Below, in pieces: positions 38,677 through 42,500 of a stretch of 64,000 nucleotides of DNA. Source of the stretch: Oopsacas minuta (Eukaryota > Animalia > Porifera); the NCBI GenBank assembly GCA_024704765.1, contig JAKMXF010000354.1, positions 853,690 to 917,689 on the forward strand, given 5' to 3'. Numbering within the stretch: the first letter of the stretch is position 1; each line of letters starts with the position of its first letter. The notes beneath the pieces were generated by a model that was given only the letters and a program-made list of their open reading frames with translations, was not told where the DNA came from and ran no database searches. The position numbers and the translations under genes were made by a program.

Positions 38677-39230
38677 CTACTGACTGTAAGTTATAAGATA
38701 GCTTGGATAAGCCAGTCCGTTCTCATAGAGGATGTGTATCTGAGATCCCCGAGTTACCCCCTGAACTGAGTGGAACCCAGCTTTTGGGCTTGTTATTGAG
38801 GCGTCACTTTTCCTTGCTTCTGGATAACCAACAAATACTTGAGCAAGAAACATACAAAATTCACCATTCCCCAATTTATGAGCGTAACTATGTGAGTAAG
38901 ATGAGTTCACGGCAAAATATAGTCCCTTCCCCCACATCCCTGCATCTGAAAAATCTGTACAGAATCCGACAGGGTGTTCAAATATTTGGTAAGGAGGAGT
39001 GTTACGAGTCCCATGAAAGAGCGGTTTTATCATGAGACAGCTCTCTCCGAATTTGCTCACTTGAATCTCTACATTCTTTTTGAAATTGTCCCAGCATTGC
39101 TTGTTCATTATCTTCTCTATTGAGATTATCTTCATGCTAGGTAAGGTTGCGAAGAAGCTACGAGCTATTGTGAAGAATTCTTCACTGTCTATCTCTAGCT
39201 TTGTTCTTCCTAGCTCACAGTCCATTGGAA
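38677..39230 (-). CDS. PARP/ARTD catalytic domain (H-Y-I, mono-ADP-ribosyltransferase type); standalone gene or terminal exon of the sacsin-like gene
   Basis: LFHGT, GMWGKGLYFA.NSSYSHSY, MFLAQVFVG, QIHILYENGLAYPSYLITY. A strong acceptor (tttattatag) lies 5 nt before the ATG at 39225. Confidence 0.88.
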
Positions 39231-39505
39231 CTATAATAAATATTGCATATTATAGTTTTTGTATATTCTGAAAGAGAATTATAGTCGCGTAGAAGTGCCG
39301 TCAAATTTGAGTATCTATACTCAAAATGTGATTACAATACTTCCCGTATACGCAAGGTTAAGAAATAATAAACTAAAATGTATATTTTGCCAATTTATAA
39401 ATTAATAATATTTGCTGATGCTTCATAAGCTCAGTTTCTATGTGTTGTAGTCATTTGTATTTCTTGAATGGCACTAAACTGAACTGCAACATTTCGTAAC
39501 TTTAT

Positions 39506-42500
39506 CTACGTACTACAATTACTTAAGGACTCACAAAAGAACATCTCATTGAGAGATAGACAAGTAGTCTCGATGTATCCTCCCTCTCCTTCTTCAAGCA
39601 TCAAAGATTCCAGGTTTGGTTCTTGCTCTTTTGTCGCTTCTTTCAGTTTGTTTAGGATCTGTCTCACAGATTTTATAGCACCTCTAGCCATATCTAAAGT
39701 ATAACATTCTCTGGGTGTATTAAATCCCATTCCAGAAGTCATGCATGGGAGACGGGTCTGTTCGTCATAATTCATTAACGGAATGATAAGCTCACTCAGT
39801 TTATTCGCTACAGCTGGTGTTGTATGTATTTTAACTTCTTCTAAGATAATACAGAGATTCCTCTGGAAGTATAAATCATATCTACAACCTCCACACAGGT
39901 GTAAGAATGCTATTAGAGCCTTCATGGTTGCTTCGAAACACAGGAAGCAAGATTGAGGGGGAAATAGTGTCGATTCGTCATCCGATTTTCTACTTAGCTT
40001 GTTCGCAGCTCTCCAATCACACTGTGCAGTACGAATCCATAGTTTAGCTGCTGATTGATCAGGTCGACTAGCATCTACTCCAGGTCTTGGACAAGTAGCT
40101 CGTCTTGCTATTGCATAAGTTCTGTGATTTGTGAGGTTTGTTAGAGTGACAGGACCCTTAGGGGGAGAGGTAGGAAGGGTAGGAAGGGTAGGAGGGGTAG
40201 GAGCTACTACAGATTGAGGTAATTTGATATCATCTAGGAATGGACAATTCTTTACGTCCTGTTCATCAAAATCAGAACTTATAGCTGTCAGGTTAGTAAT
40301 GAAACAATTCATGAGCTGTGTTCGAGTTTTTGTAAAAATATTTGATAGGAAAGAGTTCAATTCTTGAGCCACCATCGTGGGTAGACGGAGACCTGAAGTA
40401 GCCGCTTTGACGTATAAAATAGATGAGTTGGTGTCTATGAAGCAGCACATTATGTCTTGAATACAAACCACTTCATTATTACGTTGATCTTTAAGATCTA
40501 TGTCTATCTGTTTAACAGATATTACTGTGAGGTTCTTAATTCTATCTAAGACTGAGACATAACCTTCTGCTACAGGATAATCCTCAGCATATTTGCTATA
40601 GTATAACTTCCCATCTTTTGATTTTAGATGTACGATGTTCTTATTCGTATCATGGTAGTAGAGACGCATCAAGGCTCTATGGAATAGTTCTGATTTCAAA
40701 ATGCTGGCATATTGTTTGCTAAGAGGATGGTTAGGTAACTGATAATCGGCAATGGTCTTTGAAAGACTGGGAATAAGAATCTGGCTTAAGTTCTGTATCT
40801 GTAATTGCACTGGAGGTATCCCAGATCCATTTTCATCAGGCTGCAGTGTAGCTAGTATATGTATATCAATTTTAGGATGCTTTTTAACCTTAGCCAGTAG
40901 AGAAGTGTTGTCAGCATAATACACGATATTACAAGGTTTGATAAGATTGTTGTCGGTTAGTACATGTGTATCAGCTGGGTTTAAGTCTATCTTTTTATCA
41001 CTGGGAAGTTGTCTTAAAATATTTACTAGAGTAGAAAATGCTGTTTTAGCAGATTTCTCCATTTCCCAATTTTTCAACTTGAAGGTTGGTCCACATTGTA
41101 AAGCAATGCATTTCAAAACTGATGTGTAATGTGTATATGTAGCCACCTGCTGGACGCCAATCTTCTGAAGGAAATTATGATAAGAAGAGAGTGAGGAGGG
41201 GACCTTGAAGAGGTAAGGATATATTTCTTCTTTTATTTTGAAAACTAAATTCTCTACATCAAATAGAATACCATTGACTATGATACATTTGAATCTCAGG
41301 CTCTGACCATTAAGATCGAATTGTTGCTGTAGATAAGAGTATGTTTTGTGGAATAAATGCTCGTGATTTGAGTTATCCTCTGGAGAAAGCTTTTGACAAT
41401 ATTCTGAAAGACAGCCCAGATGCTGTACCACTATTTTACAGGGAGGATTTTGTTTTATATTCAGATACATCATTATTTGTGTTGAAATATTAGAGATAGC
41501 CTCTGGGAGAATATAACACATAGTCCCACAGTAATTAAGATTTTTGTATGGAAGTGCTGAATGGAAATTACCCATTGTTTTCTCGTATGTTATATCTTTT
41601 CCTTCGATTTTATCTATTTTCATTATAGGTATAAAATTGATACTAGAGATAGCGTGCAAGAGTTTAGTATCATCTTGAGTCAATCTAGTCACATCTTTTA
41701 AGAAGTTGACAAGAATAGAAATAAACTTGTCGATCTTTTCAGTGATTTTACAGTCTGCGATGATAGAAGCACAGTCTCTTAATATTTGCAGGTTAACCTT
41801 AGTGTTGAGGCCTAGGTTATTGAGGCTACTCAAGATTAGAGGATCTATTTTATCCCAGTCATTGGGCAGCTGTTTGTCTGCTAAACACAATTTGAATAGC
41901 GGAACAGATCGGGAATACAACTGGTCTGCGGTCACTCTGTGTTTTGAGTTATGTTTCTGTATAAAGGGAATCGTTCGCAATTGACTGAATAATTTTCCTT
42001 GAATTGACTCATCCAGTTTTGAAATCGATCTCAGATACTTTTTCTGCTCTTTAACATCAAGTTCGACTAGACGAGGTATGATGTATTTTGACACAAATTT
42101 TTCTATCAGTATTAGTTCTGACAGGTTATCAGCAACTGATTTGATTAATGTAATAGGATTTTTGTCTTCTGTGTCGGCTGAGAAAATACCTATATTCTGT
42201 GACTCCAATTCTTTTCTTAATAATTCTCCGATGTAAAAATTATTTTCATTCACGAAACAGACTTTTAATTCTGAGATTGATTTTAGTGTTTTGCTAATTG
42301 TAACAAATATTCGTAGATTTGCTAATATTTTGGCTGAATTATGAGTTAGAATAACCTCCATACCAGATAAGAATGTTCTTAGAATTTTTGCTTCTTCGCT
42401 TCCTAACTCTCCTTTAAGTAAATGTCCATTAGAAAGACAACCCATCAATATTTCTGGATTTATCGCATCTGTTTTAGAAATAGCTTTCTTATTCAGGAAA

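What the first reader, a model, noticed from the sequence alone, without database searches (positions are those of the whole stretch)
38677..39523. Predicted splice fusion of the giant sacsin-like gene to a mono-ADP-ribosyltransferase: an ATPase x4-HEPN-ART protein
Seen on the minus strand: six codons before the sacsin stop, TCC TTA A|GTAATTG is a phase-1 donor (intron start 39522; the same GTAATT donor is used at 2737). 292 nt downstream, tttattatag|TT CCA ATG is a strong phase-1 acceptor (exon start 39230). Joining gives ...FCESL-I-PMDCELGRTKLEIDSEEFFTIARSFFATL..., in frame through the whole PARP domain, for a 5383-aa product. Supporting points: the ORF runs about 45 aa past the HEPN domain, the PARP ORF is a bare catalytic domain with no targeting module, and the junction resembles the PM...L...SEEF...F..T lead-in of PARP domains. 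Established: HEPN and ART domains are recurrent effectors in antiviral and conflict systems; H-Y-I/L PARPs are mono-ARTs. Inference: a chaperone-like sensor scaffold with a switchable ADP-ribosylating tail, with the unspliced form ending at 39506. Phase agreement alone has a one-in-three chance probability.
Basis: partly seen in the sequence, partly recalled or inferred. Interest (0 to 1): 0.85.

Follow-up and report, generated by a model that had tools for sequence, protein, structure and literature searches.

The report
Sacsin-like giant spliced to PARP domain
In the glass sponge Oopsacas minuta a 304-base intron really does join a giant sacsin-like ATPase gene to a small ADP-ribosyltransferase exon, making one 5379-residue protein; the gene model is already in GenBank, but this domain combination, conserved across related sponge assemblies, appears undescribed in the papers I could search.

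Summary
The predicted splice fusion is real, with one correction. An RNA-like run from the same sample (X4) carries a GT..AG joint 39535|39230 on the minus strand. The junction reads ...NEMFF-F-PMDCELGR.

The window is Oopsacas minuta. My 5-exon model (5379 aa) equals GenBank KAI6646699.1 ('Sacsin-like', 5363 aa, same junction) apart from a 48-nt mini-intron in the GenBank model, which one X4 contig spans without a gap.

The product has four SACS/HSP90-like modules, a sacsin-type HEPN fold without the catalytic His, and a PARP14/15/12-like domain with an H-Y-I triad.

Seven related loci from four other data sets have a phase-1 donor at the homologous codon and an in-frame PARP exon. The sacsin-linked PARP domains form one clade (SH-aLRT 99). 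The PARP exon is under strong purifying selection.

So this is one old gene family, not two neighbouring genes. It is already annotated publicly, but I found no paper describing it. This scan noted a similar fusion on another piece of this genome. Function (ATPase-controlled mono-ADP-ribosylation, perhaps in immunity) and the 'switchable tail' remain inference.

The parts
38677..39230 (-). Terminal exon 5: 2 bases completing a split Phe codon, then Pro and the 182-codon PARP catalytic domain, with stop TAG at 38679-38677
   Evidence: RNA joint ends at 39230. Pfam PF00644 E 2e-19. 100% identical to residues 5181-5363 of KAI6646699.1.
38680..39201 (-). PARP/ARTD catalytic domain with an H-Y-I triad (LFHGT, GLYFA, SQIHIL)
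   Evidence: phmmer to PARP15, PARP12, PARP14 and ZAP structures, E 3e-14 to 1e-11, covering nearly the whole crystallised domain. Triad H-Y-I/V in all 12 sacsin-linked relatives.
39231..39534 (-). Intron 4, 304 nt, GTGAGT...TTATAG, phase 1.
   Evidence: Joint 39230<->39535 in X4 and absent from X1-X3. Depth 77 in the bin 39346-39539, most of which is intron, against about 600 on the exons. An unspliced contig 39214-39457 has depth 106. AT-rich, 28-29% GC. No Rfam match.
39535..54753 (-). Exon 4, 15219 nt: the bulk of the sacsin-like protein (SACS/HSP90-like modules and HEPN)
   Evidence: ORF list, Pfam SACS hits, exon model identical to the GenBank protein.
39638..40048 (-). Sacsin-type HEPN domain. 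The R of the Rx4-6H motif is present (RNL) and the His is absent
   Evidence: Pfam PF05168 covers the full profile but is sub-threshold (E 0.054). The only PDB hit of profile A2 is 3O10, human sacsin HEPN (E 0.022). Foldseek top hits of the AF2 model are 3O10 (E 7e-4, TM 0.72 by target), then other HEPN proteins. Motif read from alignment A2.
39842..39889 (-). 48-nt in-frame GT..AG piece (16 aa inside HEPN) that the GenBank model removes as an intron; probably not spliced
   Evidence: It is the only difference between the window model and KAI6646699.1. The segment is conserved in homologs. X4 contig 39607-40276 spans it without a gap and no joint is listed there.
54754..54807 (-). Intron 3 (54 nt, GTATTA..TTTTAG, contains a stop)
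   Evidence: tblastn gap against KAI6646699.1 and the exon model. Not checked with reads.
54808..55072 (-). Exon 3 (start of the first HSP90-like ATPase module, ...EVIQNADDA...)
55073..55128 (-). Intron 2 (56 nt)
55129..55220 (-). Exon 2
55221..55288 (-). Intron 1 (68 nt)
55289..55298 (-). Exon 1 with the start codon (ATG 55298-55296)
   Evidence: The model translates to the N-terminus of KAI6646699.1.

Best explanation
One gene of Oopsacas minuta (minus strand, 55298-38677, five exons) encodes a 5379-residue protein. It has four sacsin-type HSP90-like (GHKL) ATPase modules, a sacsin-type HEPN domain that lacks the catalytic His, a linker of about 35 residues, and a C-terminal PARP14/15/12-like catalytic domain with an H-Y-I triad.

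Shown: the PARP domain is attached by removal of a 304-nt phase-1 GT-AG intron (39534-39231) that splits a Phe codon. The in-frame stop at 39506 lies inside that intron. Shown by comparison: the arrangement goes back to a single fusion in the lineage of this sponge and its relatives, and has since been duplicated into several subfamilies and tandem arrays.

Inferred: the protein is a mono-ADP-ribosyltransferase whose activity or targeting is governed by the giant ATPase scaffold. The HEPN domain would serve as a non-catalytic dimerisation or nucleotide/RNA-binding module that brings two ART domains together. The family expansion, and the known immune links of both sacsin-like and PARP14/15/12-type proteins, suggest a stress or innate-defence role.
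For: Splicing:
- GT..AG joint 39535|39230 in RNA-like run X4, at a contig depth (620) equal to the flanking exons (about 600). X1-X3 show no joint.
- Same junction in GenBank KAI6646699.1 / UniRef A0AAV7JE64. The window model is 100% identical to it apart from a 16-aa piece.

Conservation:
- L002 is a syntenic ortholog, with the thioredoxin-NDK gene convergent downstream as in the window. It has T|GTAAGT, a 58-nt intron and ag|TT CCG ATG.
- L001, L005, L006 and L007 have a phase-1 GTRAG/GTAAA donor at the homologous codon plus an in-phase acceptor.
- In L003 and L004 the 93-nt intron equivalent is in frame and stop-free, so sacsin and PARP form one ORF.
- A second O. minuta paralog, KAI6660974.1, carries SACS + PARP.
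- In the PARP tree, 12 sacsin-linked domains plus 2 of unknown context form one clade (SH-aLRT 99) against the 85 nearest other PARP domains.
- PARP exon against its ortholog: pN 0.156, pS 0.749, dN/dS about 0.03.

Domains: Pfam SACS x4 and PARP; PARP15/12/14/ZAP as nearest structures and H-Y-I; HEPN.

Context from papers:
- Sacsin-like proteins are fused to Death or TRADD-N domains in invertebrates (PMC3710099, PMC8195603).
- A sacsin multigene family is induced by poly(I:C) and OsHV-1 in oysters (PMC7064767).
- Sacsin is related to the antiphage GHL ATPase Tiamat, whose effector domain is often swapped (bioRxiv 10.64898/2026.09.30.754977).
Against: - X4 is not on record as RNA. That it is RNA is inferred from its depth profile (about 20000 on the neighbouring gene, about 600 here, 77 in the intron), its TruSeq adapters and the GT-AG joint.
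- Only contigs were available, not reads, so isoform ratios, transcript ends and any 5' end or spliced leader at 39230 cannot be seen.
- The GenBank model may rest on the same RNA-seq and is not independent.
- Acceptors in L001, L005, L006 and L007 are predicted, not observed.
- No enzymatic, expression-induction or protein-level evidence exists. The immune role is guilt by association.
- The species behind the ENA and Logan assemblies are unknown to me.
Confidence: 0.85

Rival explanations
1. Two genes. The PARP ORF is an independent small gene with its own promoter in the 280-nt spacer, or an operon-style downstream gene receiving a spliced leader at the 39230 acceptor. The joint would then be an occasional read-through chimera.
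For: The PARP ORF has its own ATG five bases after the acceptor. An earlier scan note raises possible SL trans-splicing and operon-like runs in this genome (s1-226903; untested). Contigs cannot show 5' ends.
Against: The joint contig depth (620) matches both flanking exons, and the PARP exon is not deeper than the sacsin 3' end. The phase-1 donor at the same codon and an in-frame acceptor recur in seven other loci at 28-75% identity. In L003 and L004 the two parts form one ORF. The sacsin-linked PARP domains are one clade. A chimera would not preserve frame and intron position across paralogs.
Confidence: 0.05
2. Regulated two-isoform gene. Intron retention yields an ART-less sacsin-HEPN protein ending at 39506, and splicing yields the ART-armed form. 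The ratio would be controlled, for example by stress or infection.
For: X4 has an unspliced contig 39214-39457 at depth 106 and a depth of 77 in the bin that covers most of the intron, about one sixth of the exon depth. The retained intron gives a clean stop nine codons after the donor codon.
Against: That level fits ordinary pre-mRNA. Contig depths are not quantitative, and only one sample and condition was seen. In L003 and L004 the retained intron would not remove the ART domain because it is in frame and stop-free. The nine intron-encoded codons before the stop are not conserved among homologs.
Confidence: 0.12
3. The fusion is real but the PARP domain is a catalytically dead binding module, like PARP13/ZAP, used to read NAD+ or ADP-ribose rather than to transfer it.
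For: ZAP's inactive PARP domain is among the nearest structures (E 1e-11). The Pfam match covers only positions 1-148 of the 199 in the profile.
Against: His, both Tyr motifs (GLYFA, SYS) and the hydrophobic third triad residue are conserved in all 12 family members. The alignment to active PARP15 runs to the last residue of the domain. Purifying selection is strong.
Confidence: 0.12

Closest known systems
GenBank KAI6646699.1 / UniRef100_A0AAV7JE64 ('Sacsin-like' / 'Poly [ADP-ribose] polymerase', Oopsacas minuta)
   Same: It is the same gene. It has an identical junction NEMFF-F-PMDCEL and identical sequence over 5363 residues.
   Different: The public model removes an extra 48-nt in-frame piece (39889-39842) inside the HEPN domain. 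One RNA contig spans that piece without a gap, and homologs conserve it. The O. minuta genome paper does not mention sacsin or PARP.
Vertebrate sacsin (SACS; ARSACS protein)
   Same: Repeated SACS/HSP90-like ATPase modules (PF25794). A C-terminal HEPN domain whose nearest solved structure is human sacsin HEPN 3O10. The HEPN lacks the catalytic His, as reported for human sacsin (PMC3710099).
   Different: Four modules rather than three. No UBL or DnaJ domain was detected at E<=0.01. A PARP catalytic domain follows the HEPN, whereas in sacsin the HEPN is C-terminal.
PARP14/PARP15/PARP12/ZAP clade of mono-ADP-ribosyltransferases
   Same: These are the nearest solved catalytic domains (E 3e-14 to 1e-11). 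The triad is H-Y-I and the domain is complete.
   Different: No macro, WWE or CCCH zinc-finger modules. The targeting part is a sacsin-like ATPase-HEPN scaffold. In the tree the sacsin-linked domains form their own clade.
Invertebrate sacsin-like proteins fused to Death or TRADD-N domains (Amphimedon, cnidarians; PMC3710099, PMC8195603)
   Same: A sacsin-like scaffold joined to a module typical of immunity or conflict systems, in lineage-specific multigene families.
   Different: In those proteins the added module is an N-terminal adaptor. Here it is a C-terminal enzyme (ART). Neither paper, nor the Tiamat/sacsin survey (bioRxiv 10.64898/2026.09.30.754977), lists a PARP fusion.

Membership tests
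Sacsin family (sacsin-like) | Repeated SACS / HSP90-like GHKL ATPase modules (PF25794) | tested here: met
   Four SACS matches, best E 7e-195 summed over the first 2700 residues, plus a faint HATPase_c_3 match.
Sacsin family (sacsin-like) | HEPN domain after the ATPase repeats | tested here: met
   Sequence evidence is weak (PF05168 E 0.054; profile against 3O10 E 0.022), but the fold search puts human sacsin HEPN first (E 7e-4), followed by other HEPN proteins. The model's pLDDT is only 67-86 in the helical core.
Sacsin family (orthologs of vertebrate SACS) | N-terminal UBL and DnaJ domain before the HEPN | tested here: not met
   No Pfam hit to ubiquitin-like or DnaJ families at E<=0.01 anywhere in the protein. 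It is therefore sacsin-like, not a SACS ortholog.
HEPN RNases | Rx4-6H catalytic motif | tested here: not met
   Alignment A2 shows a conserved R-N-L, but the positions 4-6 residues on are I/L in the window protein. The paralog P0162 has RNLRVH. RNase activity is not expected for the window protein.
PARP/ARTD catalytic domain (PF00644) | Match above Pfam's gathering score | tested here: met
   70.3 bits against a cut-off of 26.7, E 2e-19.
Mono-ADP-ribosylating PARPs (H-Y-hydrophobic) | His and Tyr of the NAD+ site present, catalytic Glu replaced by I/L/V | tested here: met
   H (LFHGT), Y (GLYFA) and I (SQIHIL, aligned to the Leu of PARP15). The triad is H-Y-I/V in all 12 relatives.
Mono-ADP-ribosylating PARPs | Measured mono-ADP-ribosyltransferase activity | not testable with these tools
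   Needs a biochemical assay.
Macro-PARPs / CCCH-PARPs (PARP14/15, PARP12/ZAP subfamilies) | Macro, WWE or CCCH zinc-finger modules N-terminal to the catalytic domain | tested here: not met
   None found in the protein, whereas non-sacsin hits such as P0048, P0022 and P0018 have Macro + WWE.
Spliceosomal GT-AG intron (cis-splicing) | Joint in RNA with GT..AG ends that is absent from DNA of the same sample | tested here: met
   X4 joint 39535|39230 with GT..AG ends. X1-X3 are unjoined. The RNA nature of X4 is inferred, not on record.
Operon / SL trans-spliced downstream gene | Spliced-leader sequence joined at the acceptor before the ORF | not testable with these tools
Only contigs were available. 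Of the loose ends, 16 are listed, none near 39230, and 90 more were not shown, so I could not see whether any lies at 39230.

The most novel reading that the evidence does not exclude
Sacsin-HEPN-ART proteins are an old, expanded effector family of this sponge and its unidentified relatives (probably glass sponges). A giant multi-GHKL ATPase clamp, kin of the antiphage ATPase Tiamat, would sense a client such as misfolded or viral protein or RNA, and would switch on a dimerised mono-ADP-ribosyltransferase. Terminal-intron retention would tune the share of armed protein. If so, the family would give the first enzymatic read-out linked to a sacsin scaffold and a functional clue for the human ARSACS protein.
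Probability: 0.15. Interest if true: 0.7.

Novelty: new variant of a known kind. Interest (0 to 1): 0.42.

Why it matters
The molecular function of sacsin is still unclear, although it causes a human ataxia (ARSACS). Its invertebrate relatives keep appearing in antiviral transcriptomes. A conserved fusion of the sacsin scaffold and HEPN to an apparently active mono-ADP-ribosyltransferase, under purifying selection, is a 'Rosetta stone' link between sacsin-type ATPases and ADP-ribosylation signalling. It offers a tractable handle, because the 21-kDa ART domain can be assayed. It also adds a new targeting module to the PARP repertoire in one of the earliest-branching animal groups.

On the practical side, the work corrects the public gene model (a probably spurious 48-nt intron inside the HEPN domain). 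It also shows that ORF-style gene calls in several sponge assemblies split these genes in two.

Tried and rejected
The RNA joint and the GenBank model use GTGAGT at 39534.
- RNA runs on record: none found. Only four runs of one sample were returned, all as contigs. The RNA nature of X4 had to be inferred.
Their downstream PARP exons were reached only indirectly. P0003 and the PARP ORF P0156 lie on contigs of identical length, 1,916,916.
- phmmer of the last 450 aa against the PDB gave no HEPN hit. HEPN needed a profile and a fold search.
- 'Intronless fusion' in P0162 and P0163: rejected as a claim. The DNA shows a 93-nt, in-frame, stop-free GTAAGT..AATAG piece at the homologous spot, most likely an intron read through by the ORF caller.
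- Searches for further long PARP-bearing sacsin-like proteins found only O. minuta and unnamed ENA proteins. One covered 2950-9385 aa and one 1497-4763 aa. These searches depend on shared words, so absence elsewhere is not shown.
- ESM Atlas look-alikes of the HEPN+PARP part returned only generic PARP clusters at score 0.76.
- An Rfam scan of the intron and flanks found nothing.
- I could not identify the species behind ERZ25071281, ERZ25072730, ERZ25072740 and SRR2064712.
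Full report
**What is in the sequence**

On the minus strand a 4966-codon ORF ends with TAG at 39508-39506. A 182-codon ORF with its own ATG runs 39225-38677. The 280-nt spacer between them is AT-rich, at 28-29% GC.

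The small ORF is a PARP catalytic domain (PF00644, 70 bits, E 2e-19). The large ORF carries repeated sacsin (SACS, PF25794) domains.

**Transcript evidence**

No run on record as RNA holds this stretch. Four runs of one sample and study do, all available only as contigs.

Three of them (X1-X3) have flat depth, and two of those carry Nextera adapters. The fourth (X4) has TruSeq adapters and a depth profile that only RNA gives:
- about 20000 on the neighbouring gene;
- about 600 on the PARP ORF and on the sacsin 3' part;
- 77 in the bin 39346-39539, most of which lies in the spacer.

The O. minuta genome paper lists RNA-seq, DNA-seq, Nextera mate-pair and PacBio libraries, which fits these four runs (PMC10280926).

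X4 contains one joint, 39230<->39535. It skips 304 nt, with ends CT..AC on the + strand, which is GT..AG on the gene's strand. The contig depth is 620 and 73 nt lie on the shorter side. X1-X3 have no joint.

So a 304-nt intron (39534-39231) is removed from RNA:
- The split codon is T|TT (Phe) and the junction reads ...NEMFF-F-PMDCELGR....

An unspliced contig (39214-39457) is present at depth 106, about one sixth of the exon depth. That could be pre-mRNA or a minor isoform. Contig depths do not allow more.

**Identity and public annotation**

The C-terminal part of the big ORF retrieves 'Sacsin-like [Oopsacas minuta]' KAI6646699.1 (UniRef A0AAV7JE64, 'Poly [ADP-ribose] polymerase'). It is 5363 aa, with precomputed Pfam SACS, HATPase_c_3 and PARP. 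Its sequence contains exactly the junction seen in RNA.

I rebuilt the gene from the window, on the minus strand:

| Exon | Coordinates |
|---|---|
| 1 | 55298-55289 |
| 2 | 55220-55129 |
| 3 | 55072-54808 |
| 4 | 54753-39535 |
| 5 | 39230-38677 |

The introns are 68, 56, 54 and 304 nt, all GT..AG. The model gives 5379 aa.

It is identical to the GenBank protein except for 16 residues (39889-39842), which the GenBank model removes as a 48-nt intron. That piece lies inside the HEPN domain and is conserved in homologs. An X4 contig spans it without a gap, so the mini-intron is probably an annotation artefact.

The window is therefore O. minuta, and the fusion already exists as a public gene model. 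That model may rest on the same RNA-seq and is not independent evidence.

**Independent comparative evidence**

The sacsin ORF followed by a PARP exon recurs in seven other loci. They come from three unnamed ENA assemblies and one Logan run.

| Locus | Source | Relationship | Donor | Intron | Acceptor and junction |
|---|---|---|---|---|---|
| L002 | ERZ25072730 | Syntenic ortholog; PARP 75% identical | T\|GTAAGT | 58 nt | ag\|TT CCG ATG, again F-PMDC |
| L001 | ERZ25071281 | Sacsin about 30% identical | T\|GTGAGT at the homologous codon | 542 nt | In-phase ttttag\|TT (predicted) |
| L005 | ERZ25072730 | Sacsin ORF then PARP ORF | Phase-1 GTAAGT | Not fixed | In-phase acceptor giving Phe (predicted) |
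| L006 | ERZ25072740 | Sacsin ORF then PARP ORF | Phase-1 GTAAGT | Not fixed | In-phase acceptor giving Phe (predicted) |
| L007 | Logan SRR2064712 | Sacsin-like HEPN end then PARP ORF | Phase-1 G\|GTAAAC | 417 nt | In-phase acceptor (predicted) |
| L003, L004 | ERZ25071281 | P0162 and P0163, 4258 and 4253 aa | T\|GTAAGT | 93 nt | aatag\|TC |

For L002, synteny rests on the thioredoxin-NDK gene that lies convergent downstream, as at window 36685-38520.

In L003 and L004 the 93-nt piece is in frame and stop-free. Sacsin and PARP therefore form a single ORF whether or not it is spliced out. In those loci the genes also sit in tandem arrays.

The tails of P0002-P0004 all stop a few codons after a 'CK/CE' that corresponds to T|GTAAG or T|GTGAG.

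O. minuta has a second annotated paralog with SACS + PARP, KAI6660974.1 of 2722 aa.

I built a tree of PARP domains from the best hits among 1.84 billion representatives. All 12 sacsin-linked domains, plus two of unknown context, form one clade (SH-aLRT 99) that excludes the 85 nearest other PARP domains.

Between the window and its ortholog the PARP exon has pN 0.156 against a saturated pS of 0.749, so dN/dS is about 0.03. The introns differ fivefold in length.

Together these results point to one ancestral fusion, kept under selection and later duplicated.

**Domain anatomy**

- SACS domains: four. No UBL or DnaJ at E<=0.01.
- HEPN, by sequence: a Pfam HEPN match covers the whole profile but is sub-threshold (E 0.054). 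A profile of ten homologs hits only human sacsin HEPN 3O10 in the PDB (E 0.022).
- HEPN, by fold: an AF2 model of the last 291 residues has a mean pLDDT of 58, with 67-86 in the helical core. Its top Foldseek hits are 3O10 (E 7e-4, TM 0.72 by target), then four more HEPN proteins at ranks 4-6 and 13, and a sixth at rank 18.
- HEPN motif: the Arg of the Rx4-6H motif is conserved, but the His is missing in this protein and present in paralog P0162.
- PARP: the nearest solved structures are PARP15, PARP12, PARP14 and ZAP, aligned over essentially the whole catalytic domain. The triad is H-Y-I. It is H-Y-I or H-Y-V in all family members. By established knowledge of the ARTD family, that is the signature of mono-ADP-ribosyltransferases.

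**Likely mechanism**

Shown: one gene, a terminal phase-1 intron, and a fused ATPase x4 - HEPN - ART product.

Inferred: the ART domain is active and acts as the effector. The multi-GHKL scaffold supplies ATP-dependent client recognition or control. The non-catalytic HEPN supplies dimerisation or nucleotide/RNA binding.

Context from papers:
- Sacsin-like proteins are fused to Death and TRADD-N adaptors in sponges and cnidarians (PMC3710099, PMC8195603).
- A sacsin multigene family is induced by poly(I:C) and OsHV-1 in oysters (PMC7064767).
- Sacsin groups with the antiphage ATPase Tiamat, whose effector domain is often swapped (bioRxiv 10.64898/2026.09.30.754977).

This makes a defence or stress role plausible, but it is not shown.

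**Rivals**

Separate genes or an SL-trans-spliced downstream gene is unlikely, given the conserved phase and position, the equal depths and the single-ORF paralogs. Transcript 5' ends could not be examined, however.

A regulated intron-retention switch is possible but unsupported beyond the low intron signal.

A dead PARP domain is unlikely given the conserved NAD+-site residues.

**Novelty**

The splice fusion itself is in GenBank and UniProt under automatic names. In four full-text searches I found no paper that describes a sacsin-PARP architecture. The four surveys and papers where one would expect it do not mention one.

I rate it a new variant of known kinds: sacsin-like scaffolds carrying conflict-type modules, and PARPs carrying diverse targeting modules. 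It is of moderate interest.

Noticed in passing
window 39842-39889 (-): The GenBank model KAI6646699.1 removes a 48-nt in-frame GT..AG piece (16 aa) inside the HEPN domain. One RNA contig spans it unbroken and homologs conserve the residues, so the public model is probably 16 aa too short.
   Followed up: yes
window 36685-38520 (+): The convergent neighbour encodes thioredoxin plus three NDK domains (NME8/TXNDC3-like, 611 aa). Its RNA contig depth is about 20000, some 30-fold above the sacsin-PARP gene. The two coding regions end only 157 nt apart, and an X4 contig (38480-38703) bridges the gap. The same neighbour sits next to the ortholog in L002.
   Followed up: partly
L009:4001-7465 (ENA ERZ28496113, P0006): A 1154-aa ORF with five nearly identical tandem PARP catalytic domains (Pfam E 1e-77). 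P0008 (709 aa) has three and P0010 (543 aa) has two. These multi-PARP proteins lie outside the sacsin-linked clade, and their organisms are unknown.
   Followed up: partly
L003:529-18777 and L004:3001-18762 (ENA ERZ25071281): Sacsin-PARP genes stand in head-to-tail tandem arrays (a PARP ORF, then a 4258-aa gene, then the next 4090-aa sacsin ORF). The paralogs P0162 and P0163 are 87% identical, which points to a recently expanding family.
   Followed up: partly
alignment A2; L003: The HEPN Rx4-6H motif is intact in paralog P0162 (RNLRVH) but lost in the window protein and in P0015. Some family members may therefore keep RNase activity while others have not.
   Followed up: no
ENA and Logan gene calls around L001, L002, L005, L006, L007: ORF-style gene calling on these sponge assemblies splits each sacsin-PARP gene into a giant 'SACS' protein and a bare PARP protein of 180-206 aa. 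Database counts of stand-alone PARP domains from such assemblies are therefore inflated.
   Followed up: partly
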